Assembly (NCBI RefSeq): GCF_006345805.1
Contig: NW_021832464.1
Location: 1 to 40,301 of the forward strand
Direction of reading: 5' to 3'
DNA length: 40,301 nucleotides
From: Octopus sinensis
Lineage: Eukaryota
Position 1 is the first letter of the stretch. Each line of letters starts with the position of its first letter. Shown piece by piece: positions 3,520 through 40,246 of this stretch. The notes beneath the pieces are model-generated. The model saw nothing but the letters and a program-made list of their open reading frames with translations, was not told where the DNA came from and ran no database searches. The position numbers and the translations under genes are program-made.

Positions 3520-4400
3520 ATTTTATTTATTCATTAAATCACCAAGACCACGCTAAAAACCGAACAAACGTCACGTGATCCCAATGCACTCAACCAGGGA
3601 CCTCATCTTCGCTCGGTGATCTTTCCACGAGCCCACACAAGATCGCACAGGGCAGCAGGCTGTTTTTGGCGGAGCATTCGCTGACGGGCCGAGGTTCAGC
3701 TTGATGAGGTCTTCCAGAGAAGCTGGACCGGGGCGTTGGCTATCATGCGACCAACGATCGGTTAATCTGAGGGCCCTTTGTTGGGCCTCCTCGATTCGCC
3801 TCCTGTTGGACCGCGTATACTCTCTGATGTACTAATAGCATTGTGGATTATTCCAATTCACTTGCAAGTAGGTCGTACTTATAGAGATTTTTCACCTCAC
3901 AATGATTCAAACCTTTATGGACTGTGATTCCAGTCTCTTGGCTGAAGACTAAGCTATGGATAATGGATTTGGACAGTCGTGAGTTCGATTCCGAAGGAGG
4001 CCAGTTTTCATCCTGGGGCCAATTCTCGTTATCGTTCCCCTGCCCGTGAGGTAACGAGTACTTCTGGCACGACACAGTTGGAAATGAGGATCTCTTACCT
4101 TCCGGTCTTAGCGTGGCGTTACGGGGTCCACCATGTCAGTTGGAAAATTCCAATCGGATATGGCAACGCTCAGGAGGCACTTAATGCCTACCGAAAAAGG
4201 ACTTCTAGCTCTCAGACCCTGGGACATCGTCGTCTCAGGCCGATCATGCGGGCAGGATCGAACCTTTCATTAGGATCTCCCTCGTTTGGATCGGCGATCA
4301 CGGGAATAACTATAATTAACTGGCTTTGCCCGTGTTTGGTCTTTAATAATAATAATAATTCCAGTCTCTTATTTATCAAATAGATATTTTTTGTAATGAA
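3520..4400 (-). mobile_element. R4/Dong-clade remnant (RLE C-terminus plus GC-rich 3' UTR and A-rich tail), interrupted by the SINE-like element
   Basis: ETGITVHKGLNHCEVKNLYKYDLLASEL aligns to EVGVTSQDNLQRVELEKLRKYDLLANEL of the element at 23466-24269. A-rich tail at about 3520-3540. Sequence resumes (YLFDK) beyond the SINE TSD at 4358-4370. Confidence 0.6.
3940..4357 (+). mobile_element. SINE-like retroposon, apparently full-length (418 bp)
   Basis: 13-bp TSD ATTCCAGTCTCTT at 3927-3939 and 4358-4370; (TAA)n tail; B-box-like GTTCGATTCC at 3983-3992; 3' part near-identical to a second TSD-flanked copy at 24695-24858. Confidence 0.8.
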
Positions 4401-10645: not shown

Positions 10646-10950
10646 TTGTTTAAGTTTGACTATAAAGCTTAATCGAATATAAAAATAAATATGGTCACAT
10701 ATTTTTAACAAGTGTAATTAAAAACTTTGAAAAATAAACAGTTGGTTCATGATAGTCAAAAAAACACTTCAGAATTAATTAAATCGTTACATAAATACTC
10801 TCAAAGTGAAATCACGCTCTCATACAGTAAAGAATTTATTAATTGAGTTTTTTAATAATTATTATGTTAAAAATGAATCACATTTTTCATCATTAGGGCA
10901 ACCGCAAATATGACTTAAAAAATTCAAATATTCAAATATGACCGACAAAG

Positions 10951-15873: not shown

Positions 15874-17094
15874 TTATTTTTTCTTTTTTCGGAACCAGCA
15901 ACAAAATCTAATTCGAATTAAAAAACAAATAAACTTTGACTTTGGTTTAGAAAATACAGAATTCTAAAAAATATTACAAAATATTAACCGGAGTAGGAAT
16001 ATTTCTGACAAACGAGGAATCACGTTTGTGAGTATCAACACAGACCACCCAATCACCCTCACACTCTTCTGAATATCCAGACAAAACTTCCGACATCAAA
16101 CCAGATAAATAAGCATAATCAGGTGCCTCCTCAAATTTAAGGGACCGAGAATATGATAAAAATATGCCGAATTGTCCTTTAAATCATAATTGGTAAAATA
16201 ACCAGGCAATCCTTTGCAAAGTGCTTTAACTGTTGTGGCATTTTTTTTCTCCCCGATTTTTTGATACCGTTCTTTGACTGTGTCTGCCTGAAGTCCCTGC
16301 CAAGGCAGACATCCAATCAAAAAATAAAAGAACATATGGCCCATAGCTTCCAGGTCATCTCTTCTGCTCTGTTCTAGGAAAATAAGTAAATATAAAAACC
16401 CATCCCCTTGTGAGTATTTATGCTCATATATCGTGCAGTCCCCGTCAAGTGCCGTTGTTCGCAGAATGGAATATGGACGCCCGTTTTAGTGTCACGGTAT
16501 TCCTTCGATAAGCCAAAGTCGACAATATGCAAAACATTCGACCGGTCGTTAGGTCCAAGAAGAAAATTGTCAGGCTTCACGTCTCTGTAAACTATTCCTT
16601 TAGAGTGGACATATGAAATTAGTTTAATCTAGAAAATAAATTCAATAAATACTAATTGCTTTGCGATCAATGCAACTTTCTTTGCTGGAAATATTCTTCC
16701 ACACGTGTCAAAGTGACTTTCCAGGCTCGGACCAAGTAGATCAAGGACTAAGACATTATGAGTGCCATGCAGTCCAAAAAAATAAGCATCTGGTATTCCT
16801 TCTATTTTAATCGTCTTTAGCAAGGTCAACCTTGAGGACAGAGCATTTTGTAATACTGGTACTCCAAATGTAATTGAGGAGACCGAGCTTTGGTGCTTTC
16901 CTAAATAAATTATAATACTGACGAGAAACTAATTTTATTGCGTAGTTCTTGCCTGTAATTATATTTCTGCCTATGTGTAATAAAATCAACTAATGATAAC
17001 AAAGTCTAATTTCGCCAAAGTTCCCTGCACCGAGTCGTTGACGCAGCTCATACTTTCCGTCGATATATCCTAGATTGACAGATGACTTGGACAT
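15874..17094 (-). CDS. CSNK1G: Casein kinase I gamma (gilgamesh-type)
   Basis: Hand-spliced with introns of 30, 29, 29, 24, 26, 26, 25 and 27 nt. Motifs [104 protein letters not shown]; C-terminal CCWFRKKKK palmitoylation-type tail typical of CK1 gamma. Confidence 0.93.
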
Positions 17095-17439
17095 CAGAAT
17101 CCCCCGAGTTGATTGAACGATACAAACCGTCTATTATAAGCAATGGGATTGATCATTCAAGAATAGAAAAATCAATAATTCGTTAATTTGTCGATAAAAT
17201 TTATTAATTATAACAAGACAGCGAAAAATAAATAAGGACAAGGAAATACCAAATAACAACTAAGAGGAATAATCTGGATAAATAATTTATCATTATTGAA
17301 CAAAAATATTGATTAAATAATAAATCTAAATAAATAAAACAAGTCGATGGGCTAATTAAAACAAAGAAGTAGAATTTAGATTACAATGTTGATATAGAAT
17401 CAGACGAAAATAAAGAACATTAAGAAATTTTTTAAGATT

Positions 17440-18120
17440 TGAGATTTTCCAACCCGTAACCGAATCTTCTATGGACTCAAAGTCAGTCTCCGCAGAAAGC
17501 CGCTGGCTTGGGCTGTCTTTTGAGCTTCCACAGAATACACACGCACAGGACGAATGGGACAGGATCCTCTCTGACCAGAAACTGAACAACCTCAAGCATA
17601 AGCTCAATCAACACCCATTGGCTTGTTTATTGGCTGCCTCACAACCATATTCGGGGGTTTGGTTGACCGCCATCCCAATGGGATCGATTGGAACCTTATT
17701 GGATGATGATTGCCTGAGGATGGGCGTCTCATTGCGCCTGGGGCTAAACGTATTCCAAGAACACCGGTGCCGCTGCGGATCGACTGTTGACCCCTTTGGA
17801 TTGCACCTATTATCGTGCCAGAGAAGCTCCGGACGCCTCTCCCGACATACTGTCCTAAACGACATAGTCAAGCGGACTCTTGAAACAGCCGGATTCCCAT
17901 CACAGTTGGAACCGGCTTTATCGCACCGTCATATCTTTGCTACGATCGCAGTGGAGACTTTGGGAGTCCTCGCTCCCAGAACCAAAAAATTCCTTATTAA
18001 ACTGGGGGACCTGGCAAGCAGAAGGAGAAACGATTATCGAGAACGGACATGGCTTTTCTAACGCATATCAATAGCCATCTTGGGTTTTTGGGAATTGCCA
18101 TTCCATCTTATCCTCTGCTG
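17440..18120 (+). mobile_element. CRE-clade fragment with internal deletion of the RLE core
   Basis: SGVWLTAIPMGSIGTLLDDDCLRMGVSLRLG..HRCRCG..HLLSCQRSSGRLSRH..LEP joined directly to IFATIAVETLG, so the RPDG segment is missing. Confidence 0.88.
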
Positions 18121-19461: not shown

Positions 19462-19735
19462 CAGCGGTTCTCAACCGTGGTCCCCGGGGACCACTAGTGG
19501 TCCCCAGAAAATTTTTAGTGGTCCCCAGGAATTTTCGAAAAATAAAAATATATTAAAGTTAAAACTAATTGTACAATTAAGTATAAATCAAAAACATTGA
19601 AATTAATCAAGCGGTTTTCAATCGTGGTCCCCAGAAAATTTTTAGTGGTCCCCAGGAATTTTCGCAAAATAACAATATATTAAATTTAAAACTAATTGTA
19701 CAATTAAGTATAAATCAAAAACATTGAAATTAATC
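19462..19735 (+). repeat. Tandem duplication of the hAT left end (147 + 127 bp) with GTGGTCCCC subterminal repeats
   Basis: Second unit starts at about 19609 with a degenerate TIR (AAGCGGTTTTCAATCG). Perfect 20-bp palindrome GGGGACCACTAGTGGTCCCC at 19486-19505. Confidence 0.9.
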
Positions 19736-20563
19736 TGATTTGATTAGCGTGGTTTATCATTCTAGTTATGGTTAACAAGAATCGTCGTCTTTGGTCGGAT
19801 TCTTACGTACAATTTGGATTCACTAAATTCATTGCCCCAAATAATGAAATAAAGGCAAAATGCATGATTTGCCATAAAATTTTGGGAAACAATTCACTGA
19901 AACCTTCTCAACTTAGGCGCCACAAAGAGTCTGTACACCCAGAAAATTCCTGTTGAAGACCCAATTCCAAACTGGATCGTTCAACCTTTCTTGACCTCAT
20001 TTAAAGAATATCAGGAACTCAATTTTCAGCAGAGCTTGATTGAACTTCAATGTAATCAGTCTGCTCAGATTATTTTCAAATGTACTTCATTATTAGATTT
20101 TTGGTATTCTCATTAATAATTACTTTTTATTGTTAGGTGTCAGATGGCGAAAGAATTCCCCATTTTGAGTAAAACTGCATTGGAATCAATACTTGCATTC
20201 CCCACTACTTATCACTGTGAATGGCGATGTCGTGTCTGACTTTTCTAAAAACAAAATATAGAAATAGACTACGGGTACAAGATGATATGCGAGTAGCTTT
20301 GTCGAACATAGAGCCTGATATAAGTAAAATTATTCTGAGCAAACAAGATCAGAAATCTCACTAAATTACTATTAAATTTTCTGTTATTTTCATAATGTTC
20401 ATGTTATTTTTATAATAAATATTCGAACATGTCTAAACCTGGCCCTGGCGAGGCCAAAAATTGTGCGCTAATACCAAAAAATGTTTATTTTATTTAAGGT
20501 GGTCCCCACAAAATTTTATAGTGCAAAAGTGGTCCCCAGTCTAAAAAAGGTTGAGAACCGCTG
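19462..20563 (+). mobile_element. Non-autonomous hAT (Buster/Charlie-type) internal-deletion element, 1102 bp
   Basis: 15-bp TIRs CAGCGGTTCTCAACC / GGTTGAGAACCGCTG; 8-bp TSD GCCTAATC (19454-19461, 20564-20571; nnnTAnnn). Retains the BED finger (19768-19956) and the C-terminal dimerisation region (FWCQMAKEFPILSKTALESILAFPTTYHCE..KTKYRNRL..DDMRVALS). Confidence 0.95.
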
Positions 20564-22995: not shown

Positions 22996-23152
22996 TAATT
23001 TTAATAATGCAATCTTTTAATTTTACATTTTTATAATTAATGGAGATGCAAATAATCTCATTGAATTTGCATTTTCTTTAAAGCTCTGTCAGGTTAAATT
23101 AAATACTAAAAACCTGAAATCTTGCATCAAATTGCGAACTTAAATCTTTAAT

Positions 23153-25932
23153 AATTATTTAATTAACACAATTCCGAATAAAATAGTATTAAAAGACCAT
23201 TCAGCCTTCGGAGTCCACTCCACGAGCTCCACTATCTTCCCGATCTATCATCCCAAGGCCCACACTTCCGTTAATTTTAAGTCGTTTCGATCCATCCAGA
23301 AAAGGAACATGGTAGGCATCCTCGACAAGTCGACGCACCGCGATCTCTCGGTCACCGATCCCGTTAGCTTCCTCGTATTTTGAGAATACCTCCTCAACCC
23401 GGGCTTCATAATCCATTTGCGTAAGACCTCTCCGAAAGTCCAGCACAATGCTCTCCATCGTACGCTTAAGCACAATTGATTGCATATAAGCAATCAGATG
23501 TTCCCTCACTCTGATCGAGTCCAAATATTTTAAAATATTTAGACACAATGCCATCCCATGTAAGGACCACAGGAATTATATTCACTTTGGCCTTGTGAAT
23601 CAGGGATAATTCATTAGCGAGTAAATCATATTTTCTTAACTTTTCAAGTTCTACTCGCTGTAAATTATCTTGAGAAGTAACTCCCACTTCCACAATCCAA
23701 ATTACGTTCTCTTTTTTATCATATACCAATAAATCAGGTTTGTTATAACGAATGGTAGAATCAGTCTCGATTCGAGTGTCCACCCGTATCTCAACTCTTT
23801 CATTCGATATAACCTCCTGCACCAAGTGTGTCTTCAACCTTTTCTGATTCTTCAATCCATAAAGACGACAAAAATGGAGATGCAAACAGCGTACAACTTC
23901 ATTATGACGTCTCGTGTAGTCAAGATACAGCATACGTTCACATCTAGTGGCCAGATGATCCACTGTTTTCTTCGCCGCTTTACAATGAGGGCATCTTGAG
24001 ACCAGTTCTTCGGTGGAAAAGAAAATATTCCGATACTGAAGAAAACATGCCAATCCTTCATTGCGCGGTGAGTTATTTCCATTTGCAAGCCATATAGATG
24101 AGGACTTGTGATCAACATTTGGAAGGTTTTGTGAATTGAATAGGATAAAGTGTAAATTTTTTCCTTTAATCTTGGTCATCAGAGAAGTTTCCTGAAGGTT
24201 TATTAGATTTCCAAGACACTGCTTCAATGGGACTCCAGAAAAATACTCTTCCCCATACTTGGACTGCAAATACTCTACAATTGTTGATGCGTCTTAGCAT
24301 AATTTTCTACTTGTAGAATTGCAGCTTTACGTGGGGAGGTGAGTCTTTTCTGTTTGAGGTCGGTCAAAAACCTCAATAAAATCTTTTCACTTTTAAAATT
24401 GACTGATTGTAGCCCCCTCCCATAAAATGTTCTTGGGAGATACAATCTGTCTAAATTCGCCGGCTTGGCGTGTATATGCAGGCTTGTTAAGAGCTGCCGT
24501 ATACTTTTATCAACTTGATCGAACATGGTCGGCTCAACATTTAGGACTCCAATATAATAATTATAAATCGATAGTGCATATTCATTAACTGTTTTGAAGA
24601 AATTTCCAGAATTTAGCTTTGTATTAGCAAGCTTCTTAATCCTTGCAATTGCTTCACTTTTCAAGACATCCATCACTTCATTACTCTTCATTTCTCTAGC
24701 TCTCAGACCCTGGGACATCGTCGTCTCAGGCCGATCATGCGGGCAGGATCGAACCTTTCAGAAGGATCTCCCTCGTTTGGATCGGCGATCACGGGAATAA
24801 CTATAATTAACTGGCTTTGCCCGTGTTTGGTCTTTAATAAATAAATAAAATAAAAAAAATTACTCTTCATTTCACTAGATTTGTTTTCAATGATTCCAAG
24901 GTAGCGATATCCTTGCAATCCATCGAATACACATGCTTCATCACCCAATGCCATCGAATTTGTTGCAGACTTTTCGAAGTTCTCCATTCCCGAGGCTTCC
25001 AAAAACTCGTTTGTATAGCTCATCATTCTTACTAACAGGTCTTCACTTTCAGCGAACATTTTAATATCATCGATGAACATAAAATGATTCGTAGAAAAAT
25101 TTTGCGTTAAGGAACTTCACTTGTTTTGACAGATATTGTGGGAAACTTAAGAGTTAAACCTCTACTCAAGGGGTCCATCACCAACACAAACAATAATGGA
25201 GACAAACTATCCCCTTGCAATATGCCTCTTCACAATTTCACTTTACGAATGGTACGAGTATTCAGCTTTAGATGCACAGTCCATCTTCCCACCAATGATT
25301 TGACAAAGTTAACAATCTACTTAGGGATTCCAGAGTTGTCCATAATTTTAAACAAAAACATATGATCCACGGAATCAAACGCCTTCCTGATGTCAATCCA
25401 TAAAGAATATAGCTTGTGGTCCATGGCGTTAAATACAGATTTATTCAACAGAGCTTGTTCCTTTGCACCCTGACAACTTCGTCTCGTACCGAGTTGGTTT
25501 TCTGATATAACATCAAATGCCTCCACGTAATCAGCCATTTTTAAATATACACATTTAGTCATCAACTTATACAGTGACGGCATGCATGTTATAGGCCTCA
25601 ACTCCTTTGGAGAAGTCGGATTCTTACACTTTGGAACCAAATAGGTTATCCCAGTATAGAACCACTCTCCAGGGTAGTAATTATTTCCAATAATCCTCAT
25701 TATTTATGCATAAATAAATTTGTGAAGACAATCAAGCTTCTTGATGAAGTAATACTCCATCACATCCACACCCAGCTGCCTTCCAATTGGGTATAAATTC
25801 AATAACATCCGTTAACAACTCCTCATTAATCTTATCGGATCATTCTCAACTCCAGTAATTCTTCGGAGAAGCGGATAATCACCGTTTAAGACATTTTTAG
25901 GTTTCCATACACTCTCCCAGAATTCAGCACAC
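23153..25932 (-). mobile_element. R4/Dong-clade non-LTR retrotransposon, 5'-truncated and frameshifted
   Basis: WKAAG.DG, LRPITCMPSLYK, QLG..QGAKEQ, WIDIRKAFDS, RG..QGDSLSP, FIDD, YRYLGI, RLYLPR..GRGL, CPHC..H..C..RHNEV, NKPD..EVG.T..EKLRKY..WDG. 12-bp TSD TAAATCTTTAAT at 23141-23152 and 25933-25944. Confidence 0.92.
24695..24858 (+). mobile_element. 5'-truncated copy of the SINE-like element
   Basis: Near-identical to 4204-4357; A-rich tail; 15-bp TSD ATTACTCTTCATTTC at 24680-24694 and 24859-24873; interrupts the R4 ORF just after the YLG motif. Confidence 0.92.
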
Positions 25933-26354
25933 TAAATCTTTAATTATTTTTAAATATTTATCAGTTGAGCCACTTTCGAAATTTTCTGACAAATAAGGAA
26001 AATGTGTGTAACCATTATTTGATATCTGCGCTTTCCATAAAATTAATTTCTTAGCGAAGGCATTGATATATCCATAAATTTGATAATTTAATGTATTTTC
26101 CCCTTGTAGTTCGACATTTAGGGCAGACAGATGCATCGATAGATCCTACTCATTTACAATAATTATCCAAAGGGATCAATGGCCCTCTATACTATAGAGC
26201 AGTGATTCTCAAGCTTTTTTGCTCAGGGGCCGCAAATTAAAAAAAAAATTTACAGGGGCCGCAAATAATTTTTAAGAATTATTTATTAACCAAATAATCA
26301 AAATTAGGTTTAATTCTACTTGTTGAAGTACGTAACAAATCACTCAGATGAGTA

Positions 26355-27310
26355 TCAGTCAATCTGCTGCGAAACTTTGTTTTTAATTCGAACGAGTTTA
26401 CTAAATGTCGATTCGCAGACATATGTTGATCCAAACATTGCTAAATTTTTCTTTGCATTATTGACTAAATTCGGAAATCGGTTCTCTAGAATTCTCGAAT
26501 AAAAGTCAATTATTGAAATGTTGTTGAACAAACTTTTCAGTTCAACATCATTTTGCAAATCAATCAATTCCAGTTGGTAAATCCCGGAAACCTCCTCACT
26601 TTTCATAATTAATACAGATGCAAATAATCTCATTGAATTTGCACCTTCTTTAAAGCTCTGTCAGCTTAAATTAAATACTAAAAACCTGAAATCTTGCATC
26701 AAATTGCAAATTTAAATCTTCAATTATTTTTAAATATTTATCAGTTGAGCCACTTTCGGAATTTTCTGACAAATAAGGAAAATGTGTGTAATCATTATTT
26801 GATATCTGCGCTTTCCATAAAATTAATTTCTTAACGAAGGCATTTATATATCCATAAATTTGATAATTTAGCTTATTTTCCCCTTGTAGTTCGACATTTA
26901 GGGCAGACAGATGCACCGATAGATCCACATAAAATGCTAAATCTGCTACCCATCTATTGTCTTTCAATAATGCATTGTCCACTTTATTTTCAGTGAATAA
27001 AATAATTTCAGGGAGAAGTTGATAAAATCTAAATATAAAAATAAAAAAAATTAACCTTTTGAGACAAGAGCTACGGCTTAACCATCTTACTACTGAGAAA
27101 AGAAGGACATCGCCATAATCCGAATCGGTTTCAGTTAAAAATGTTTTAAATTTTCGGTGATTCAAGGCGTTCGCCCGAATCCAATTGACAATTTTTATCA
27201 CTACTTCAGAAACATTTTCCATTTTAATATTTTTGGAAATTAGGTTTTCCTGATGAATAATGCAATGATGCCATAATACTGGAGTCCAGTTATTATCACA
27301 CCTCCATTTA
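26355..27310 (-). pseudogene. hAT transposase 3' half (duplicate copy)
   Basis: HCIIHQE..VVKIVNWIR..ALNHRKFK..VRWLSR..DLAF.VDL..LNVELQG..FGSTYVCESTFS; duplicates 30500-31430. Confidence 0.9.
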
Positions 27311-27311
27311 T

Positions 27312-27557
27312 TCAATAAACAACCGATCCAATTTGCTGCTCATTTTCGTTAAAAATGGGTGCATTAAAGAATGGAACTTGGTCAAATTCTGAGCAATTAA
27401 GAAGCAATAAATCGTCAAAGCTCTTTTCCTTCGCCCCCAAACATTTTAGTTCAGATGGCTGATTGTAGGAGTAAGATGCTTCTCTATAAGTACCTCGATA
27501 ATTGTTATATCGTCCACGTGAGTTATTGAATCCTCTAGTAATTCCTTTATTCATCAC
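27312..27557 (-). pseudogene. GAR1: H/ACA RNP subunit Gar1, 5' half only
   Basis: RG-containing N-terminus, then QVPFFNAPIFNENEQQIGSV matching the Gar1 core [20 protein letters not shown]. The sequence switches into hAT at 27311 and the 3' half is absent from the window. Confidence 0.8.
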
Positions 27558-27735
27558 CAGAAATAAAATAATAAAAATCGTGACACAATATTTTATGAAA
27601 TTAATTAATTTTAAAATTGAAATTATTCTTCTTATTAATAATCACGAGATGAATTCATTTAAACGTTAGAGATTTTTACAGTGAACCTATCCCTATCTGG
27701 AAATAAAATTCGAATCCAAACTAAATCAATACTAA

Positions 27736-28209
27736 ATGAATCAATTAACCAAGTGTGTGTATTACAGGATTCAAACCCTTCTGGATAAATCTTTATGTAT
27801 TGTCAGGGCTCTCAATTTGTTCCGATAAGTTAATTATGATCAATGTTAAAAAAAACCTTTATTAATAAAAAAGCCGACTTTGGGTTTGTGAAGCTTATTA
27901 TTTCCCGAGAATGAGAGAAGTTGGCGAAACAGTAAAGAATTATGATAAGATGACTCTTGAGCAAGCTCAAAGTGTGATCAGCCAGCTTACAGATCAGGAT
28001 AAAAAGGTTCTTGGAATGATTGTAAGACATGGAAACAAAGTGTCGAGTTATTCAGATAAGAACCTGATGACTCCTTATAATTTGAGTGTTTACTTTGCAC
28101 CTAATTTGTTTCACTCTGGCATGTTTGAATATATAAATAAGTCAATTTATATGCTAAGTTTGTCGCCTATTTGATTGACAATCATGAAAAGAAACTTGAG
28201 TTTTTATAA
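27736..28209 (+). CDS. RhoGAP-domain protein (5' end uncertain)
   Basis: QLTDQDKKVLGMIVRHGNKVSSYSDKNLMTPYNLSVYFAPNLF matches the RhoGAP 'N.M...NL...F.PNL' motif. A 23-nt GC-AG intron joins it to NLYAKFVAYLIDNHEKKLEFL*. Confidence 0.6.
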
Positions 28210-28865
28210 AATAGCGGGCAAGTTTTTAAGAGTAAAAGACAATAAAGTGTTCATTTTAGCTTTTTTTGTCTACAAACTCAAGAGGGTGTCCATTTTTGTA
28301 TTCGATAGGTGGATTGGCCACATTTGAGTTACTTTTGGAGGACTCACTCCCTTCGTCTTAGAATTCATCAAAAAAAGGACAAATTAACAACAAATGTGCA
28401 GAAATTCAAAGACTTGCTGACTGAAATGGACCCTCAGTCGATAAACTGTGTGCTCACCACAACCTCCTGCTTTGCTCCTCGAGTTCCTGACACGTTTTTA
28501 CTGTTTTTGATTACTGATAGAATACCAGAACTGGCCCGTCTCAATGGTTGTCAATTAAACTTTAAATTATATAAATATTATTATTAACCCCTAAGCTTGC
28601 TTAGCATAACAAACCCTGCACAAACAGTCATAGCTAACTAATTGAATGAAGAAGCCAAGGAAGAAGGAACTGTTTGTGCTGATCAACATTAGGCTCCAAA
28701 TCTTCAATACAGCTTTCCGGATTTAAAGAGAGGTAAGGAATATCTGGTTAGCCCAGTTCCCATTTGTCAGCTTCCTACCGTCGCTCACCGCACGTCATTT
28801 GTTTCCGGAAGGGTTTTACATACTGAAGATTTTTCATTGGTAAGTAATCATAGATAGATCAATGA

Positions 28866-29640
28866 TTTTTTTTTTTTTTTTTGAATAATGAAAATTAATA
28901 CAGTCAAATTAATTAATAGAGAATTAATGTCGTGAACTTGAGGGTTAGTCCGACGACGAAGCACTGCGGATAGAGAGGCAGTTCCCGCGAAGAATTGCAA
29001 CCGAGATGCGCTGGAAAAGCCAGCTCGTCTCCCTCCGGTCATTTGTATTCTGTGAGATTCTTCTCCCACAACCCGTAACAGATTTCTACCTTCTTTCCAA
29101 CCACACCGGAGGTCTCAAAGGCTAGGGGGACAAACTCAACGACGTTCGGAAGCACAGCGTACTTCGTCGGCCAGCACTCCTCCTATCGGCCAGCACTCCT
29201 CCTACAGGACAATGCGTGTAAACCGTTCGAAGGAATCAAAAAACCACAGCGACAACGGTGAGGTTGGCAGATTTCAAGTCCAAGTCGAAGACACACTCCG
29301 ATACGTATAGTTTCGTCTTCCATAAGCAGACCATTGGACGCCAACGGAAGTGCGTTTAGCCAGTCTCCTGAGTGAGGCTGACAGGCACAGTTCAAAGAAG
29401 CCAGTTCCAACTGGTCGACTCGCGTGCGAAGACTCTCCAACAGGTGTGTGCACCAGATGACATCCCAACTCTTCTGTATTGAAGGAATCTCCGGAAGGCC
29501 AAGTCCGAGCGATCTCCAGGCGAGAACAGCAACAGGGTATTCCGTAAGCTCATCAAGTTCGAGTGAGTTGATAAGAACAGAGCGAACGAAATTGCCGGAA
29601 GCAGACATCGACGAGAGATAACAAGGCAAAGCAAGATCTG
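28866..29640 (-). mobile_element. 5'-truncated CRE-clade copy with poly(A) tail and deleted RLE core
   Basis: HSGDWLNALPLASNGLLMEDETIRIGVCLRLG..HRCRCG..HALSCRRSAGR, then a 19-bp tandem duplication (29167-29204), then KYA..FVP.AFETSG..FQRISVAILRGN; poly(T) on the plus strand at about 28866-28882. Confidence 0.88.
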
Positions 29641-29738
29641 CACATATTGTTAAAAAATTTTTAATTAAATTGAATTTTTTTAAATTTGTTTGAATAAACT
29701 AACATTAAAATAATTAGGCCATTTTTTTGTGATTATAT

Positions 29739-30265
29739 ATGATAATAACAGTTTTAATTTTTATTTTGTCTAATGTGACTTGTGGTCCAGTAGCATTTGA
29801 AGAATGTGGGGGATCATCATCTATTACAAGCATTGATGTTACAGATTGTAATATGACCTCATGTTATGTATATGGAGGGGAGAATTTGGAAATAAAAATA
29901 AATCTTACCATATGTATAAATACGATTTTATTTTTAGCAAAGTCACTTAGAAAAATCAGCGCGGAGGGATTTATCGAAACACCCCGTCTTCCCATTTTTA
30001 GAGCACCCAAAGCATGTCTTTATATCTCAGAGCAGTGTCCACCTGTAGAAAACAGTCAAATCAGCTTTGACTATAGACGGAAACTTCCCAATGTACATTT
30101 GAATGTATTTTATATATATTTATCATATAGCCGATGAATCTAAAAGTTTTTGTTAAGTTTTTAGAAGACGATGAAATAATTGCCTGCGCAAAATTCAATG
30201 TACAGATTGGCTCGCGTGAAAAGAATTTTGAAAATGAAATTAATGTCAAAATTCGATTTGACTGA
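29739..30265 (+). CDS. NPC2: NPC2-like ML-domain secreted lipid-binding protein, intact
   Basis: Signal peptide, FEECGG..IDVTDC..C..G..I.I...; introns of 24 and 26 nt; ..AC..C P..F.Y..LPNV..V.VKF..I.C.. gives the six-cysteine ML pattern. Family-level call; orthology is not established. Confidence 0.85.
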
Positions 30266-30499
30266 ATTTCATTAATCTAATTAATCTCACTAATAATTCC
30301 GGTTTTGGTTTTGATTAATTTTTTTTTGTTAACAATTTATAATTTGAGGAGAACCATAAGTACAGTGCGACCCAGAATTGTGGGAATTTTTCCTTAATTT
30401 TGAGGCTTTCCCCAAAAAGAGGGTTTTCCTTAAATGTAAGTCTCTCCTGTTCGATGTCTTACCTCAATAATATAACCAAGACGGATAACTACAATTTTA

Positions 30500-32241
30500 T
30501 TTTGTTTTAATTCGGACAAGTTTAGTAAATGTCGATTCGCAGACATATGTTGATCCAAATATCGCTAAATTTTTTTTGTATTATTGGCTAGATTCGGTAA
30601 TCGGTTCTCTGGAATTCTCGTAAAAGTCAATTATTGCAATGTTGCTGAACAAACTTTTCAGTTCGACATCATTTTGAAAATCAATCAATTCCAGTTGGTA
30701 AATGCCGGAAATTCCTCACATCATAATTAATGGAGATGCAAATAATCTCATTGAATTTGCCACCTTCTTTAAAGCTCTGTCAGGTTAAATTAATACTAAA
30801 AACCTGAAATCTTGTATCAAATTGCGAACTTAAATCTTTAATTATTTTAAATATTTATCAGTTGACCCACTTTCGAAATTTTCTGACAAATAAGGAAAAT
30901 GTGTGTAACCATTATTTGATATCTGCGCTTTCCATAAAATTAATTTCTTAACGAAGGCATTTATATATCCATAAATTGATAATTTAGCTTATTTTCCCCT
31001 TGTAGTTCGACATTTAGGGCAGACAGATGCACCGATAGATCCACATAAAATGCTAAATCTGCTACCCATCTATTGTCTTTCAATAATGCATTGTCCACTT
31101 TATTTTCAGTGAATAAAATAATTTCAGGGAGAAGTTGATAAAATCTAAATATAAAAATAAAAGAAATTAACCTTTTGAGACAAGAGCTACGGCTTAACCA
31201 TCTTACTACTGAGAAAAGAAGGACATCGCCATAATCCGAATCGGTTTCAGTTAAAAATGTTTTAAATTTTCGGTGATTCAAGGCGTTCGCCCGAATCCAA
31301 TTGACAATTTTTATCACTACTTCAGAAACATTTTCCATTTTAATATTTTTGGAAATTAGGTTTTCCTGATGAATAATGCAATGATGCCATAATACTGGAG
31401 TCCAGTTATTATCACACCTCCATTTATTCATACGTCCACGAAAACCAGTTTACTGCCAATCATATAAGGGGCTCCATCAGTTGAAATTGAAACTAATTTT
31501 TTTGGATCCAGTTGATAATCTTCAATTAATTTCACAATTGGAGAAAAAATCTGTGTTCCTTTAGTTTCTCCGTGAAGTGAATTCAATGAAAAAAATTCTT
31601 CGTATACTCGAAAGTCAGATGTTACTCCCCTTATAAACACTACTAATTGTTCGATATCTGAAATATCTTTGGAACAATCAAGCGCAAAGAATAATATTGA
31701 AAATCTTTACAAATTCTAAAAATACAAAACAATTGCATACTGTAAAAGTTCGTTAATCAGATTATCAGATATATCACTGACTCTTCTAGTAACAGTATCG
31801 TTACTTAGAGGTAACTTGTGTGCAATATCGAAAACAGCGGGCGAACAACATTCCGATGCAAATATTTCGATTGCCGTTTTATATAATTCGCCATCAGAAT
31901 AAGGCTTCATATTTTTAGCCAATAGGTAACTAATTTTGTATGATGCCAGGTTAATATTAGACGAATATGTGCCACTTTTGAAAGTAAATGATCGTTTTAA
32001 ATAATCTTCTTTCATTTGTTTTAGTTTTTTCGTCCGAGAAACACCAGTGAATTTGTCATAAAGAATAGAGTGGAAACGGTAGTGCCGTTCGATTGTATAC
32101 GTTTTTAGAGTTGCAAAATAGAATGGCATATTAGGCAAAGAGCCTTTCCATTGATCTCAATAATGAAATATTTTTCTTCCCAGATGTGTTGAAAAATCCT
32201 ATTTTCCTCGGAAAGTTTTCGACACGTTTAGAATCAGACAT
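30500..32241 (-). pseudogene. hAT transposase (GTF2IRD2-like), near full length, frameshifted, 3' end truncated
   Basis: MSDSKR..NRIFQHIWEEKYF..ALCLIC..ERHY..ASYKISYLLAKNMKPYSDGE..LPLSNDTVTRR..SL.LD.SKDISD..QL..FIRG..STDGAP..HCIIHQE; introns of 25 and 27 nt; several 1-bp deletions. Confidence 0.9.
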
Positions 32242-32394
32242 CACAACAACAAATAAAAACGTGACATTTTTTTATTCATAAAATTTAAAAATATTAAATT
32301 AAAAAATAAAACATTATAAAACCTAGGGGCCGCAAATTAAATCCTAGGGGCCGACTTGAGAATCACTGCTATAGAGGAATCAAATGTAGACCTA

Positions 32395-32760
32395 CCTACT
32401 CATTCACAATAATTATCCAAGGGAACAATGGCCCACAGGACAGTTTGAATAAAGATTGTTTCAAACGAACTTTCGGTTCTCCACGAAGCAAAAGTAAATA
32501 TTATTACGTTAGTCTTGAAATGGGATGCGGTTGTCTTAAGGTTTTTTAAAAGTCACATGGATAAGTTATCCACTAAAGAAGTAACGAGGACATACATCTA
32601 GTCGGTTAAGCTAAAAAGGACGCTGGAGAGTACGCTGGTTGAATACAGACATGGAATGAAGGTAGACGACGTAGAGTAACTCCGCGGAGCTGATATGCCA
32701 CGTGGACACTCAACTGGAAAAAAACCTCGAAAAGGAAATTAAAAAGCAAAGGAAGTTTGT
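32395..32760 (+). mobile_element. R4/Dong-clade RLE C-terminal remnant
   Basis: VSNELSVLHEAKVNIITLVLKWDAVV..YI*SVKLKRTLESTLVEYRHG matches LANELSLIHKAKVNIIPVVLTWDGIV..YMQSIVLKRTMESIVLDFRRG. Confidence 0.75.
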
Positions 32761-33523: not shown

Positions 33524-34863
33524 CAGTGATTCGCAAAGTGCGGCCCTTAGGATTTAATTAAGGGGCTTATGTTTCTATAAATATTTTATTTAATATTTAA
33601 AAAATTGTCAGTTTTTTTATTTTTCACTATAGTATGCAATCATTTATATTGCCATATTTTGTTTTGATTAAATCTTTCTTTGATCATTGAACGAATGAAT
33701 TTCAATACCACCGACCTTGCAATAACTCATCATTGTAAATATATTTACAAATAGGCGCTGATCATTTCATATTCATTGCAATTGTAGTCTATAATGTTTA
33801 CTATTTTTATAGGAAATGTCAAGTTACATGACTACAATGGCAATTCGTTATTATAGAGGAGTGATTCTTTCTTTGATAGTCGAATGACTATTACTTCCGG
33901 CCATTCAGTGACATGTATCATTATTATTCACTTAATTTAGTCGTCGACGAGAGGATCAAAATTTTTCAAATTGCAACAATTGAAATCGTCATCTTTTCAG
34001 GTGATTTTATTGTGTCACGAGCCGGACGCGTTACACTTGTGTTTTTTCTGTTAGTGGACACAATAGCTTGGAATACCATTGCATGCGCAGTTACTTCGGA
34101 ATAAAAAGGGAAATTATTCGGAAAATAGTGTCAGATTGTGAAGTGTGCCGTTTTTCCACACCATTAAAAGTTGGCGATGAGCAAACTCATATTCCCTTCT
34201 ATCAAGGAAATTGCTGATTTCATAACTTTCAGCTACTGTGATTAACTGGTTACATATCAAATAATGTATTTTTGCATCAATCGTTGTACAAAAATGGAAA
34301 AGTTCCCATTTTTTGAAACATTCAGTTTCATCTCACAAACACCAGTTTTTAGTTGCAGAAGAAACAAGTGACATAGTCAAACAAGATTTACAATAAACTA
34401 ATTATTAAAAAATAGATCCAAAAATGTGCTCTGTGCATAGATATTTGGAACACGGCACTTGATAGAGAAACAAACTCTGGAAAAAAGTGAATTAATAAGG
34501 ATGGAGATAAAATAATGACGAGAATATGTAAGAAGAACAGATTATAGGAATATTTCAAAAAATGTTACAAAATGATGAAATTTCAAATAATTTAATCATT
34601 AAACGAAACTACATCACGAATTATTCCTTCTGAATCCAATTACATGCAAAAATAATAACGACGATAATGTTAAAAAAAGCACAACATAAAGATAATCCGT
34701 GTGCTTCCACGTGGCACAATTTATTAGGTTTGCCATGAATAGTTAAGATAATTAAACAATAATTAATAAAAAATAAGCTTTATTTTAATTAGAACTATTT
34801 TATATTTTAAGGGCTCTCGGGCCGCACCTATACATGCAAAAAGCCGCATATTTGACACCCCTA
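33524..34863. mobile_element. Two hAT-type ends (left CAGTGATTCGCAAAGTGCGGCCC; right GGGCCGCA..TTTGACACCCCTA) around TE debris
   Basis: Both termini resemble Buster/Charlie ends and both flanks are nnnTAnnn (ATCTAGAT, CCTTAGAC), but TIRs and TSDs do not match each other. Confidence 0.35.
34059..34217 (+). mobile_element. Integrase zinc-binding (H2C2) remnant, Ginger/Gypsy/SCAND3-like
   Basis: HNSLEYHCMRSYFGIKREIIRKIVSDCEVC resembles 'H.G....Y..I...Y.GI.RE.IR..V..C..C'. Confidence 0.45.
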
Positions 34864-36629: not shown

Positions 36630-37255
36630 AAATATCTAAAAAAATTTTTGACTGGTCTCATTATCCTTGATATCCGTCGACCGATCGAGCGAAGGAAGCA
36701 GAGCGTCTTGGGGCCGAAAATCCCCGAAGACTTCGAGGCAATTGAAGTAAAAAATGCGAGTTCGAGAGGTGGCCAGATTTGAGAATCTTACGATCCTCGG
36801 CCAGCCTCGAAGCGTGCCCAGGATCAACAGCGGACAGAGCAAGATTTTCGCGTAAGAATGTATCTGAGCAGGTAGAGTCCCTAATAAGAGATTTCCCCTG
36901 CTCGTAAGGGAAGGTGTACATGCATTTTGGGCGTCGGCTGTCATCTTTATCAAGCCCAACAGGCTCGAGGATTGACGAGATACCCGCGGTAACGAGGGCT
37001 CTCTGTATGATTACGTTGAGTTCACTGTGGCGAGGGGCACGACCAGCATCATAGGCAAGCGAGAGGGTGCAAAACCGTACTAGTTAAAGTTTTCCCACAG
37101 CTGCATTTGTGCGCCTGACATATCTTCAGCCTAACAAGGATGGAGATTGCGATTCTTAAACAATCCTTGTCAACCAGATTCCCGATGGAAAGTAAAGGGA
37201 GAGCTTTTTACCAAACACCGCTGCTTTGACACCAATCAGGACGTAAGCAAGCGAG
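36630..37255 (-). mobile_element. CRE-clade 3' fragment, same subfamily as 10951-13589
   Basis: Direct nucleotide similarity to about 12835-13460 (e.g. ACCTTCCCTTACGAGCAGGGGAAATC); frameshifts; RPDG motif reads RRPKC. Confidence 0.9.
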
Positions 37256-38509: not shown

Positions 38510-38837
38510 TACGATGTCCTCGACTTACATGATGAGGTCCTTAAAACCTTCCCCCCAAAAAAAATTAAAAAAAAAATTTCTGCATTTTGGTTAAAATGAA
38601 CAACTACGATGTCCTCGACTTACATGATGAGGTCCATAAAACCTTCTCCCCAAAAAAAAATAAAAAAAAAATTTTCTGCATTTTGGTTAAAATGAACAAC
38701 TACGGTGTCCTCGACTTACATGATGAGGTCCTTAAAACCTTCCCCCCAAAAAAAAATTAAAAAAAATTTTCTGCATTTTGGTTAAAATGAACAACTACGA
38801 TGTCCTCGACTTACATGATGAGGTCCTTAAAACCTTC
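38510..38837 (+). repeat. 95-96-bp minisatellite, about 3.4 copies
   Basis: Units start at 38510, 38605, 38701 and 38796 (TACGATGTCCTCGACTTACATGATGAGGTCC...). Confidence 0.97.
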
Positions 38838-39192: not shown

Positions 39193-39430
39193 AAGTTTTT
39201 CGTAAAGATAGAATTTATTTTCGGTATGCCTCTTTTCCTAAACTTTTTTATTATTCAAAAATAATTTTTTCAATAGATAACCGAAGGAGGGAAGACGACC
39301 CTAAGAAAAGAAGTTTTTCGTAAAGATAGAATTTATTTTCTGTATGCCTCTTTTTTCCTAATATTTTTTATTATTCAAAAATAATTTTTTAAATAGATAA
39401 CCGAAGGAGGAAAAACGAAACTGAAGAAAA
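39193..39430 (+). repeat. 118-bp tandem duplication, 2 copies
   Basis: AAGTTTTTCGTAAAGATAGAATTTATTTTC...ACCGAAGGAGG starts at 39193 and 39311. Confidence 0.93.
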
Positions 39431-39784
39431 AACGGTCAGCTTAAGGTAATTAATTAAATCTTTTTTGTGTGTCGCTTTTTTGGCTGCTGCTACTCTGCTT
39501 GCCGCATCTGCGCCTGCCCCATTTCCGCCAGTGGTTTGTCTAATCAACGTCACTAAGCTAAATCTCCGGACTATAAAGGCTCTTAAGCATTATCTTAATT
39601 GGCTGTTAAAAAAATTAGACAGGTTGTTGCCGTGGCGGCAGAGATTTTTTTTGTTTATACTATTTTACAAATTTTTAAAGTTTTTTTTTGTTTTTTTATT
39701 TTTTTGTTTTTAAATTATTTATTTTTATTTATTTTTATTTGTTTTTTTATTTTTTTTGTTATTTTCTAAAAATTCAACCGGATT

Positions 39785-40246
39785 GAATTTTTAAACTCCT
39801 TAGATCCCTCTGGAATGCCGAATCATCTTTTAAAATTAAAGATAGGCGTTCCAGTGGTTTTATTACGAAATCTTGCGCCACCTAAATTATGCTACGGAAC
39901 GAGGTTAGTTATCAAAAATTTAATGGCTAACGTAATAGAGGCGACGATATTAACAGGTAAGTATAGAGGTGAAAATGTTTATATTCCACGAATTCCGATA
40001 ATTTCTGATGAATTACCATTTAGATTTAAAAGGCTGCAATTTCCTTTGAGGATGAGTTTTGCAATGACAATAAACAAGGCCCAGGGACAGTCATTAAAGG
40101 TAGTTGGGTTATTTTTAGAGAGTGAGTGCTTTTCACATGGACAGCTGTATGTGGGATGCTCGAGGGTAGGCAGAAGAGAAAATTTATTCATATATGCCAA
40201 GGAAGGACGGACGACAAACATCGTTTATCAACAGGCGATAGAATAG
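39785..40246 (+). pseudogene. Helitron PIF1-like helicase C-terminal fragment
   Basis: [84 protein letters not shown]; the N-terminal part is absent. Confidence 0.93.

What the first reader, a model, noticed from the sequence alone, without database searches (positions are those of the whole stretch)
26200..32368. Pack-type composite hAT transposon carrying three intron-containing host genes
Seen: matching 14-bp TIRs and an exact 8-bp nnnTAnnn TSD (CTATAGAG) bracket 6169 bp. Inside, a transposase (32241-30500) and a duplicate of its 3' half (27310-26300) enclose about 3.2 kb holding a GAR1 5' half, a RhoGAP, possible further exons (28250-28830), a CRE insertion and an intact NPC2-like gene. 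Removing the element rejoins the flanks into a 73-bp tandem duplication (26145-26199 plus 32377-32394, repeated from 32395), which independently suggests they were once adjacent. Known: 8-bp nnnTAnnn TSDs are typical of Buster-group hATs; gene capture is well described for Pack-MULEs and Helitrons, much less for animal hATs. Inferred: host genes were captured as DNA (introns retained) and sit within a single mobile unit, a route for duplicating genes in a compact genome.
Basis: partly seen in the sequence, partly recalled or inferred. Interest (0 to 1): 0.85.

Follow-up and report, generated by a model that had tools for sequence, protein, structure and literature searches.

The report
hAT transposon stuffed with captured DNA
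A 6.2-kb cut-and-paste transposon (hAT, Buster group) has intact ends, but its middle is a patchwork of host-gene fragments, one complete NPC2-like gene, a retrotransposon piece and a scrap of DNA from a Chlamydia-like bacterium; this shows how such elements pick up DNA, but nothing shows it has moved since.

Summary
The structure is real. Exact 14-bp inverted ends (26200-26213, 32355-32368) and an exact 8-bp duplication, CTATAGAG, bracket 6169 bp. Both match an intact related Buster-type hAT found elsewhere.

Inside are two broken, overlapping transposase parts: A (26200-27314) and B (30501-32368). They enclose 3186 bp.

The cargo is not three intron-containing host genes. It is a patchwork:
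- a GAR1 5' fragment;
- a 349-bp piece that is 89% identical in DNA to a Simkaniaceae (Chlamydia-like) bacterial contig. It covers the 3' end of a RhoGAP-domain gene plus its terminator, and is frameshifted;
- a ~40-codon SepSecS fragment;
- a 5'-truncated retrotransposon piece;
- one apparently complete NPC2-like gene with introns of 24 and 26 (or 38) nt.

A and B differ by 8.9% over 417 bp, then by 0.4% over 522 bp, so A is a mosaic. A third fragment of the same transposase lies 46 bp outside the element. The "73-bp tandem duplication" is only a 41-bp repeat.

Best reading: a hAT whose interior was rebuilt by error-prone break repair with template switching, like maize Ds elements that carry filler DNA. 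Whether it moved after capture cannot be tested here. Interest is moderate; the bacterial fragment is the surprise.

The parts
26192..26199 (.). Left copy of the 8-bp target-site duplication, CTATAGAG (nnnTAnnn form)
   Evidence: (I4)
26200..26213 (+). TIR at the 3' end, CAGTGATTCTCAAG. Subterminal GGGGCCGCAAAT motifs follow at 26226 and 26255.
   Evidence: The end is homologous to the 3' end of the intact relative L001/L002.
26200..27314 (-). hAT part A: the 3' end plus the transposase 3' half (about residues 267-591 of a 601-aa relative). It has two frameshifts. It is a mosaic: 26376-26792 is 8.9% diverged from B, and 26793-27314 is 0.4% diverged.
   Evidence: (Dimer_Tnp_hAT)
27315..27557 (-). 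GAR1 5' fragment. It is an open frame from the ATG and aligns to human GAR1 residues 55-113 of 217. It is cut at the junction with A.
   Evidence: (Pfam Gar1 positions 3-45 of 92)
27558..27932 (.). AT-rich cargo of unassigned origin
   Evidence: No protein match in six frames.
27933..28281 (+). Fragment of Simkaniaceae-like bacterial DNA. It holds the last ~87 codons of a RhoGAP-domain gene (frameshift near 28145-28150) plus 73 bp downstream with a decayed intrinsic terminator. Both edges are sharp.
   Evidence: 89% DNA identity over 351 aligned columns to L003 10557-10904; the contig's RuvB is 93% identical to that of a Simkania MAG.
28372..28547 (+). SepSecS fragment, about human residues 195-245 of 501. 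A frameshift lies just upstream, and 28494-28520 is a putative 27-nt GT-AG intron.
   Evidence: The intron was read directly from the sequence.
28866..29645 (-). 5'-truncated, GC-rich non-LTR retrotransposon fragment of the RLE type. It covers residues 562-867 of the 878-aa ORF at 10919-13552 and is frameshifted. Its poly(A) tail is at 28866-28882. The CRE clade was not verified.
29739..30265 (+). NPC2-like (ML-domain) gene, apparently complete. Exons are 29739-29913, 29938-30104 (or to 30092) and 30131-30265. Introns are 24 nt and 26 (or 38) nt. It has a signal-peptide-like N-terminus, and all six cysteines align with human NPC2.
   Evidence: (ML domain positions 2-133 of 133; 22.1 bits against a cut-off of 22.7).
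30266..30500 (.). Cargo of unassigned origin. The junction with B shares only about TTTG.
30501..32368 (-). hAT part B: the 5' end plus transposase residues about 11-562. It has at least three frameshifts and two in-frame stops. It lacks the last ~176 bp and the 3' TIR.
32355..32368 (-). TIR at the 5' end, CAGTGATTCTCAAG
32369..32376 (.). Right copy of the TSD, CTATAGAG
25933..26146 (-). Outside the element: hAT fragment C (right piece). Together with 23028-23163 it equals part A 26600-26926. It has no termini. It is split by an AT-rich RLE non-LTR element at 23164-25932. It ends 46 bp from the TSD.
   Evidence: (D1)
26145..26185 (+). Left copy of a 41-bp direct repeat. The right copy is at 32395-32434 (38/41 identical). 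This is all that remains of the claimed 73-bp duplication.
   Evidence: (D19)

Best explanation
This is a non-autonomous Buster-group hAT transposon with genuine ends. Its interior was rebuilt by error-prone double-strand-break (gap) repair with template switching.

How it would have happened: the two ends were resynthesised inward from hAT templates and ran past each other. That gives part A (3' end up to about residue 267) and part B (5' end up to about residue 562), which overlap by about 940 bp. Instead of annealing, the two were joined through about 3.2 kb of filler copied or ligated from unrelated places. The filler holds a GAR1 5' fragment, a scrap of DNA from a Chlamydia-like (Simkaniaceae) intracellular bacterium, a SepSecS fragment and a complete NPC2-like gene. 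A non-LTR retrotransposon piece either came with the filler or inserted later.

Shown: the ends, the TSD, the duplication, the sharp junctions, the identity of each cargo piece and the A/B mosaic.

Inferred: the repair mechanism, the order of events, and whether the rebuilding happened at this site or before the element landed here. With both ends intact it could in principle be moved by a transposase supplied by another copy. No evidence shows that it has been.
For: Ends and target site:
- The exact TIRs plus TSD are found 0 times in 100 shuffles.
- An intact 2358-bp relative in two loci has TIR CAGTGATTCCCAACC, a homologous 3' subterminal region, and TSDs GGCTAAAT and GTTTAGCC, both of the nnnTAnnn form.

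Transposase:
- It is Buster/GTF2IRD2-like.
- Both parts are broken.

Rebuilt interior:
- Junction J1 at 27314/27315 is sharp.
- A and B differ at 37 positions in 417 bp, then at 2 in 522 bp, so at least two hAT templates or a conversion event were involved.
- The cargo is made of short unrelated pieces with sharp edges: GAR1, the bacterial fragment, SepSecS and NPC2.
- The bacterial piece carries the bacterial terminator. The hairpin is intact in the bacterium (-18.8 kcal/mol, z -4.8) and decayed in the window. Its substitutions are AT-biased and spread evenly over codon positions.

Precedent:
- Maize Ds2 and Ds-l4 elements carry such filler, occasionally gene fragments with introns, and this is attributed to errors in repair after excision (PMC3260210).
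Against: - No donor locus and no second copy could be examined. The source genome is not in any searchable collection.
- Junction microhomology is weak: about 4 nt at J2 and none demonstrable at J1.
- The A/B mosaic could equally come from later gene conversion between the two parts.
- Three cargo stretches (27558-27932, 28548-28865, 30266-30500) have no identified source.
- The hAT fragment C and the 41-bp repeat just outside the element are not explained by this model without an extra, earlier event.
- A complete gene within filler is unusual for repair-derived filler.
Confidence: 0.55

Rival explanations
1. Macrotransposon, which is close to the reader's 'composite'. Two separate hAT copies in direct orientation flanked a stretch of chromosome. 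Each lost its inner end. The outer 3' and 5' ends were then used together, so the whole 6.2 kb transposed here and made one TSD.
For: - Two partial copies lie in direct orientation with one TSD around both.
- Their 3' portions differ by 8.9%, as expected for different family members.
- Macrotransposition by Ac/Ds ends is documented (PMC3260210; PMC9910405 and PMC4270019 are listed).
Against: - It needs two independent truncations of the inner ends.
- The intervening DNA is a patchwork of truncated, unrelated pieces on both strands, including bacterial DNA, rather than an ordinary gene-bearing stretch.
- The 522 bp next to J1 are 99.6% identical between the two copies, which requires an added conversion step.
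Confidence: 0.2
2. Stepwise accumulation in place. A simple hAT inserted here and was later hit by ordinary insertions and local duplications, with no single repair event.
For: - The non-LTR piece has a poly(A) tail, as a normal retrotransposition would leave.
- The window is a transposon-dense region with nested insertions. For example, fragment C is split by a non-LTR element.
Against: - Gene fragments and bacterial DNA do not insert by themselves.
- There are no TSDs or insertion signatures at the internal junctions.
- The partial duplication of 940 bp of transposase still needs a recombination or repair event.
Confidence: 0.12
3. Assembly artefact: a false join through the 522-bp near-identical stretch shared by A and B, or a chimeric contig.
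For: - A and B share 522 bp at 99.6% identity.
- Several frameshifts lie in homopolymer runs.
- No reads are available to check.
Against: - A collapse would remove the duplication rather than create it.
- The TIRs and TSD match exactly across 6.2 kb.
- The bacterial piece is 11% diverged, AT-shifted and frameshifted, with sharp eukaryotic flanks. It is therefore not fresh contamination.
Confidence: 0.08
4. Chance pairing of two independent, truncated hAT insertions whose outer flanks happen to share 8 bp.
For: The family prefers nnnTAnnn targets, which raises the chance of a coincidence. The region is AT-rich.
Against: - From the window's base composition, the per-base match probability is about 0.28. 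That gives about 4e-5 for 8 of 8, or about 5e-4 if the central TA is taken as given (my own calculation).
- No such structure appears in 100 shuffles.
- The TSD lies outside the 41-bp flank repeat, so it is not inherited from repeated flanks.
Confidence: 0.03

Closest known systems
Maize Ds2 and Ds-l4 elements (Ac/Ds family, hAT superfamily) that carry 'filler' DNA, including compound Ds-l4-483
   Same: - hAT ends and an 8-bp TSD are kept.
- The interior is replaced by unrelated filler, occasionally fragments of genes with their introns or nested retroelements.
- The filler is attributed to faulty repair after excision.
- Gene capture is called rare for hATs (PMC3260210).
   Different: - This element belongs to the Buster group, not the Ac group, and the host is an animal-like genome with introns of 24-27 nt.
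- The interior is a partial duplication plus filler, not a deletion plus filler.
- The cargo includes one complete gene and bacterial DNA.
- Only one copy is known.
Ac/Ds macrotransposons and composite insertions from alternative transposition
   Same: Outer ends of two hAT copies in direct orientation bracket non-transposon DNA, and a single 8-bp TSD surrounds the whole (PMC3260210; papers listed).
   Different: Both inner ends are missing here. The intervening DNA is a patchwork, not a contiguous chromosome segment. The two copies share a 99.6%-identical stretch.
Pack-MULEs and other transduplicating DNA transposons (also Turmoil-1 of C. elegans)
   Same: A TIR-bounded non-autonomous element carries fragments of several unrelated genes, taken up as genomic DNA.
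   Different: - It is a different superfamily.
- Pack-MULEs occur in many copies with identifiable parent genes. Here copy number and parents are unknown.
- This element keeps most of its own, broken, transposase.
- As of 2008 transduplication was said to be unknown in animals (PMC2572040, abstract).
Intact related Buster-type element in ENA assembly ERZ25067576 (L001 and L002, 3610-5967)
   Same: - The transposase is 49% identical.
- TIR CAGTGATTCCCAACC compares with CAGTGATTCTCAAGC here.
- The 3' subterminal region is homologous.
- The TSDs are of the nnnTAnnn form.
   Different: It is 2358 bp, has a single open 601-aa transposase gene, carries no cargo, and exists as two identical copies.
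Nuclear insertions of endosymbiont DNA (for example Wolbachia-to-host transfers). This comparison is from my own knowledge.
   Same: A truncated, decaying piece of DNA from an obligate intracellular bacterium, including non-coding sequence, is embedded in eukaryotic DNA.
   Different: The donor lineage is Simkaniaceae (Chlamydiota). The piece is only 349 bp. It sits inside a DNA transposon. Whether the source organism carries such a bacterium is unknown.

Membership tests
hAT superfamily, Buster group | 8-bp target-site duplication | tested here: met
   CTATAGAG lies on both sides.
hAT superfamily, Buster group | Target preference nnnTAnnn, against nTnnnnAn for the Ac group. The consensus is from my own knowledge (Arensburger et al. 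2011). That Ac and Buster differ in target choice is stated in PMC3942097. | tested here: met
   - This element: CTA-TA-GAG.
- Element 19462-20563: GCC-TA-ATC.
- Lone end at 33524: ATC-TA-GAT.
- Relatives: GGC-TA-AAT and GTT-TA-GCC.

hAT superfamily, Buster group | Short TIRs that begin with CAG or TAG | tested here: met
   14-bp CAGTGATTCTCAAG, matching 13 of 15 positions of the relative's TIR.
hAT superfamily, Buster group | Transposase with a hAT C-terminal dimerisation domain and a DUF4371/FAM200-ZBED5 RNase-H-like core | tested here: met
   - PF05699 scores 25.6 bits, above its cut-off.
- PF14291 is weak.
- All top homologues carry PF14291, PF27073 and PF27046, and many also PF05699. The named ones are GTF2IRD2-like or EPM2AIP1.
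hAT superfamily, Buster group | Placement inside the Buster clade in a transposase phylogeny | not tested
   No tree was built. Placement is inferred from the nearest named homologues.
Autonomous hAT element | One uninterrupted transposase reading frame | tested here: not met
   B is spread over four reading-frame segments and has two in-frame stops. A is spread over three reading-frame segments.
Pack-type (transduplicating) element | Non-transposon gene sequence between the TIRs of a TSD-flanked element | tested here: met
   GAR1 and SepSecS fragments, and an NPC2-like gene.
Pack-type (transduplicating) element | Parent (donor) gene copies elsewhere in the same genome | not testable with these tools
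   The source genome is not in any collection.
Pack-type (transduplicating) element | Further copies with the same cargo at other sites with different TSDs, as evidence of movement after capture | not testable with these tools
   The window holds only this one copy. A metagenome scan for the family found nothing.
hAT macrotransposon | Two element copies in direct orientation with one TSD around both | tested here: met
hAT macrotransposon | The intervening DNA is a contiguous piece of the donor chromosome | tested here: inconclusive
   The patchwork of truncated pieces on both strands, including bacterial DNA, argues against it. The donor locus cannot be examined.
Lateral transfer of bacterial DNA into a eukaryotic genome | Nucleotide-level identity to a bacterial genome that extends into bacterial non-coding sequence | tested here: met
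   89% identity over 351 aligned columns, including 73 bp with the intrinsic terminator.
Lateral transfer of bacterial DNA into a eukaryotic genome | The matching contig is truly bacterial and can be assigned to a lineage | tested here: met
   The contig is gene-dense, with RuvB, SpoIID, DCD and CorC. Its RuvB is 93% identical to that of a Simkania MAG and 80% to Ca. Neptunochlamydia.
Lateral transfer of bacterial DNA into a eukaryotic genome | Physical linkage to eukaryotic DNA confirmed by reads | not testable with these tools
   No reads are available. The divergence, AT shift and frameshift argue against contamination.

The most novel reading that the evidence does not exclude
The composite has transposed after capture, so a Buster-type hAT in a parasitic animal with ultra-short introns acts as a vehicle. 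It would copy a working NPC2-like lipid-binding gene, and spread DNA acquired from a Chlamydia-like intracellular bacterium, around the host genome. That would be an animal counterpart of Pack-type elements that also propagates laterally acquired DNA.
Probability: 0.12. Interest if true: 0.75.

Novelty: new member of a known kind. Interest (0 to 1): 0.45.

Why it matters
Uptake of gene sequence by hAT elements is described as rare even in maize, and transduplication is barely documented in animals. Here the junctions are still sharp enough to read the events: overlapping resynthesis from both ends, filler from at least five sources, and a switch between two hAT templates. The example sits in a genome whose introns are only 24-27 nt long.

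Two further points matter if they hold up. First, one cargo gene (NPC2-like) looks complete, so the element could in principle duplicate a gene. Second, one cargo piece comes from a Simkaniaceae-like bacterium. That points to past contact between this organism and a chlamydial symbiont or co-parasite, and shows that break repair at transposons can fix such DNA in a nuclear genome.

It is also a warning for annotation. The 'RhoGAP' here would be called a host gene by domain search alone.

Tried and rejected
- Rfam and tRNA scans of the window found nothing.
- Exact look-up of ten window ORFs in the protein collection found none. The source genome is therefore not available, and donors and further copies cannot be sought.
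- A joined query of the four cargo proteins returned only the bacterial RhoGAP-domain protein and one distant SepSecS. There is no close GAR1 or NPC2 relative.
- A six-frame query of the three unassigned cargo stretches gave no hit.
- A metagenome scan with a 23-mer that is invariant in all three hAT copies gave no match.
- A scan with a 27-mer shared by the window and the bacterium found only a sister sample of the same bacterium.
- A scan of GTDB representative genomes for the RhoGAP-domain protein found none.
- I tested whether the 41-bp repeat belongs to the AT-rich non-LTR family whose fragment forms the right flank. Homology starts only at 32451, so this is not shown.
- I looked for a TSD around the internal non-LTR fragment and saw none.
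- I considered a ciliate genetic code because of the tiny introns. All three stop codons interrupt the frames, so I rejected it.
- I considered the N-terminal half of a RhoGAP domain at 27560-27930. No frame gives a match at E <= 1, and the DNA homology to the bacterium stops sharply at 27933.
- 'CRE' as the clade of the internal retroelement could not be verified. The data show only an RLE-type element (reverse transcriptase, then a CCHC motif, then the endonuclease region).

Full report
**1. The observation**

The ends are as described. CAGTGATTCTCAAG lies at 26200-26213 on the + strand and at 32355-32368 on the - strand, without a mismatch. CTATAGAG lies directly outside both ends, at 26192-26199 and 32369-32376 (pair I4). 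The element is 6169 bp.

I scanned the window for any perfect inverted repeat of at least 12 bp that is flanked by a perfect 8-bp direct repeat, at a spacing of 0.2-12 kb. The scan returns two structures, this one and 19462-20563. It returns none in 100 shuffles. The motif GGGGCCGCAAAT recurs next to both ends.

**2. The ends are genuine family ends**

The conceptual transposase finds 230 relatives. All the top ones carry PF14291, PF27073 and PF27046, and many also PF05699. The named ones are 'GTF2IRD2-like', 'EPM2AIP1' or 'hAT dimerisation domain' proteins, which points to the Buster side of the hAT superfamily. The best match is 49% identical (Pfam).

The best full-length relative, P0002, lies in two loci of one ENA assembly. 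The two loci are identical over exactly 2358 bp. That block starts with CAGTGATTCCCAACC and ends with its inverted copy. It is flanked by GGCTAAAT in one locus and GTTTAGCC in the other. Its 3' subterminal sequence (..CAACCTTTTTTGGTGTCGGGGCCGAAT..) is plainly homologous to the window's left end (..CAAGCTTTTTTGCTCAGGGGCCGCAAAT..).

Every TSD seen fits nnnTAnnn:
- this element;
- element 19462-20563, with GCCTAATC;
- the lone end at 33524, preceded by ATCTAGAT;
- the two relatives.

That this pattern marks Buster elements is my own knowledge (Arensburger et al. 2011). PMC3942097 confirms that Ac and Buster differ in target choice.

**3. The hAT parts**

I measured both parts against the 601-aa relative.
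- Part B (30501-32368) covers residues 11-562. It is spread over four reading-frame segments and contains two in-frame stops. It lacks the last ~176 bp and the 3' TIR.
- Part A (26200-27314) covers residues 267-591 over three reading-frame segments. It carries the true 3' end.

Neither part can encode a transposase. A and B overlap by about 940 bp. Joined without the overlap they would give an element of about 2.05 kb.

The junction of A with the cargo is sharp. A and B are identical up to ..CCATTTATTCA, and unrelated from the next base on.

The overlap is a mosaic. There are 37 differences in 26376-26792 (8.9%) but only 2 in 26793-27314 (0.4%). So A combines sequence from two different family members, or its inner 522 bp were later converted by B.

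**4. A third copy, outside the element**

Positions 25933-26146 and 23028-23163 together equal part A 26600-26926 (about residues 389-500). The match is about 96% over 25933-26146 and 91-95% over the shorter piece. This fragment has no termini. It is split by an AT-rich non-LTR element at 23164-25932.

The fragment ends 46 bp from the TSD and directly abuts the left copy of the 41-bp repeat. Where all three copies can be compared, no pair is consistently closest.

**5. The flanks**

Removing the element does bring two similar stretches close together. Only 41 bp are alike (26145-26185 and 32395-32434; 38/41). The other 32 bp of the proposed 73-bp unit score no better than shuffled sequence.

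The TSD lies outside the repeat, so the TSD match is not inherited from repeated flanks.

The right flank at about 32451-32551 is a fragment of the same AT-rich non-LTR family (tblastn E = 2e-9; DNA alignment). The element therefore sits in old transposon debris.

**6. The cargo, piece by piece**

(a) *27315-27557 (-).* This is an open frame from an ATG that aligns with human GAR1 residues 55-113 of 217. It ends at the junction with A. It is a 5' fragment, and no intron is seen in it.

(b) *27933-28281 (+).* Domain search calls it RhoGAP, but only profile positions 87-146 of 148 are present. No frame upstream gives the first half of the domain.

The only close protein among 5.8 billion is P0121, at 76% identity. 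P0121 is encoded on contigs from three sources. Those contigs are gene-dense and bacterial, with RuvB, SpoIID, dCTP deaminase, CorC and a serpin, at 40.7% GC. Their RuvB is 93% identical to that of a 'Simkania sp.' MAG and 80% to Ca. Neptunochlamydia. The hits that follow are mostly other Chlamydiota.

At the DNA level the window matches this contig at 89% over 351 aligned columns, with sharp edges on both sides. The match covers the last ~87 codons and 73 bp beyond the stop codon. That downstream stretch is a textbook intrinsic terminator in the bacterium: a 14-bp stem, -18.8 kcal/mol, z = -4.8. In the window it is a decayed remnant at -8 kcal/mol.

The window copy has a frameshift near 28145-28150. 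Of its 34 substitutions, 20 are A/T in the window against G/C in the bacterium. They fall 10/8/8 on codon positions 1/2/3. That is neutral decay towards the host's AT-rich composition.

I conclude that this is a relic of bacterial DNA in the eukaryotic sequence, not a host gene. The direction of transfer, bacterium to eukaryote, is inferred from the terminator and the truncation.

(c) *28372-28547 (+).* About 40 codons match SepSecS (human residues 195-235 of 501). A frameshift lies just upstream. A 27-nt GT-AG interval at 28494-28520 restores the next few conserved residues (read). It is a fragment, probably taken up as genomic DNA.

(d) *28866-29645 (-).* This is the C-terminal 300 residues of a GC-rich non-LTR element with a restriction-like endonuclease. 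It is frameshifted and has a 17-nt poly(A) tail. Reverse transcriptase is absent.

(e) *29739-30265 (+).* Removing GT-AG intervals of 24 nt (29914-29937) and 26 or 38 nt (up to 30130) gives a 154-158-aa protein. It has a hydrophobic N-terminus and a full-length ML domain (profile 2-133 of 133; 22.1 bits against a cut-off of 22.7). It aligns end to end with human NPC2, with all six cysteines in register. It looks complete. Whether it works is unknown.

(f) *27558-27932, 28548-28865 and 30266-30500.* These match nothing.

**7. The organism**

A casein-kinase-1-like gene at 15977-16928 (-) has three GT-AG introns of 24, 26 and 26 nt. Among animals, introns under 30 nt are reported only for myxobolid myxozoans and Dicyema japonicum (PMC13644364). 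The window probably comes from such a parasite. I could not decide which.

The window is dense in transposons: two non-LTR families, three hAT-related structures and a Helitron/Pif1 helicase piece.

**8. Mechanism**

The anatomy is as follows: both ends kept, the two halves overlapping instead of meeting, sharp junctions, filler made of short unrelated pieces, and a switch between two hAT templates. This is what interrupted synthesis-dependent repair of a transposon-induced gap is expected to leave. It matches the 'filler DNA' Ds elements of maize, where capture of gene fragments with introns is documented and called rare for hATs (PMC3260210).

I rate this reading at about 0.55. It leaves open whether the rebuilding happened here, which would keep the original TSD, or elsewhere before transposition.

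The rivals are:
- a macrotransposon built from two truncated copies, at 0.2. It fits the direct orientation and the single TSD, but not the patchwork cargo or the 99.6%-identical stretch;
- stepwise accumulation in place, at 0.12;
- mis-assembly, at 0.08;
- chance pairing of two insertions, at 0.03. From base composition, an 8-of-8 match has a probability of about 4e-5, or about 5e-4 if the central TA is taken as given.

The hAT fragment C and the 41-bp repeat next to the site hint at an earlier hAT excision and repair event at the same place. That is speculation.

**9. Comparison, novelty and verdict**

The element works like a Ds2/Ds-l4-type hAT with filler, and in outline like a Pack-type element. 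It meets the tested criteria for a Buster-group hAT. It fails the criterion for an autonomous element.

For 'Pack-type', the two features that matter most, parent genes and further copies, cannot be tested. For 'macrotransposon', the contiguity of the cargo is doubtful.

I file it as a new member of a known kind.

The unexpected result is the Simkaniaceae-like DNA fragment inside the element. Interest is 0.45.

Noticed in passing
window 27933-28281: A 349-bp relic of Simkaniaceae-like (Chlamydiota) bacterial DNA lies in a eukaryotic sequence. It holds the 3' end of a RhoGAP-domain gene plus its intrinsic terminator and is 89% identical in DNA to contigs from three metagenome sources. The full-length bacterial protein (P0121) has no other close relative among 5.8 billion proteins.
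   Followed up: yes
window 19462-20563: A second Buster-type non-autonomous hAT of 1102 bp. It has TIR CAGCGGTTCTCAACC, TSD GCCTAATC, an internal 127-bp tandem repeat (19497-19735), remnants of a zinc-finger N-terminus (19744-19953) and a C-terminal transposase remnant (20021-20221).
   Followed up: partly
window 33524-33615: A lone hAT 5'-type end (CAGTGATTCGCAAAG..., 75% identical to 32280-32375 inverted), preceded by ATCTAGAT. No partner end is present in the window.
   Followed up: partly
window 23028-26146: An internal fragment of the same hAT transposase, without termini, is split by an AT-rich non-LTR element with a restriction-like endonuclease (23164-25932, - strand). About 17-22 bp are duplicated at the insertion point. 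The fragment ends 46 bp from the main element's TSD.
   Followed up: partly
window 15977-16928 (-): A casein-kinase-1-like gene with three GT-AG introns of 24, 26 and 26 nt. Introns this short are reported among animals only for myxobolid myxozoans and Dicyema japonicum (PMC13644364).
   Followed up: partly
window 10919-13552 (+): An uninterrupted 878-aa ORF of a non-LTR retrotransposon (reverse transcriptase, CCHC motif, restriction-like endonuclease). Its GC content is 51%, against about 31% around it. Decayed relatives lie at 17414-18058, 28866-29645 and 36664-37254.
   Followed up: partly
window 39770-40243 (+): The C-terminal part of a Pif1-type helicase (Pif1 2B domain, E = 1e-16), probably a Helitron remnant.
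   Followed up: no
window 38510-38837 and 39193-39430: Tandem repeats with periods of about 96 bp (at least three copies, 96% identical) and about 118 bp (two copies, 91% identical).
   Followed up: no
window 4204-4349 and 24695-24840: A 146-bp stretch that is 98.6% identical between two copies of the AT-rich non-LTR family. This is much closer than the rest of those copies.
   Followed up: no
L001/L002 3610-5967 (ENA ERZ25067576): An intact 2358-bp Buster-type hAT with an open 601-aa transposase gene is present as two identical copies on contigs longer than 1 Mb. It is a likely active element in an unidentified eukaryote.
   Followed up: partly
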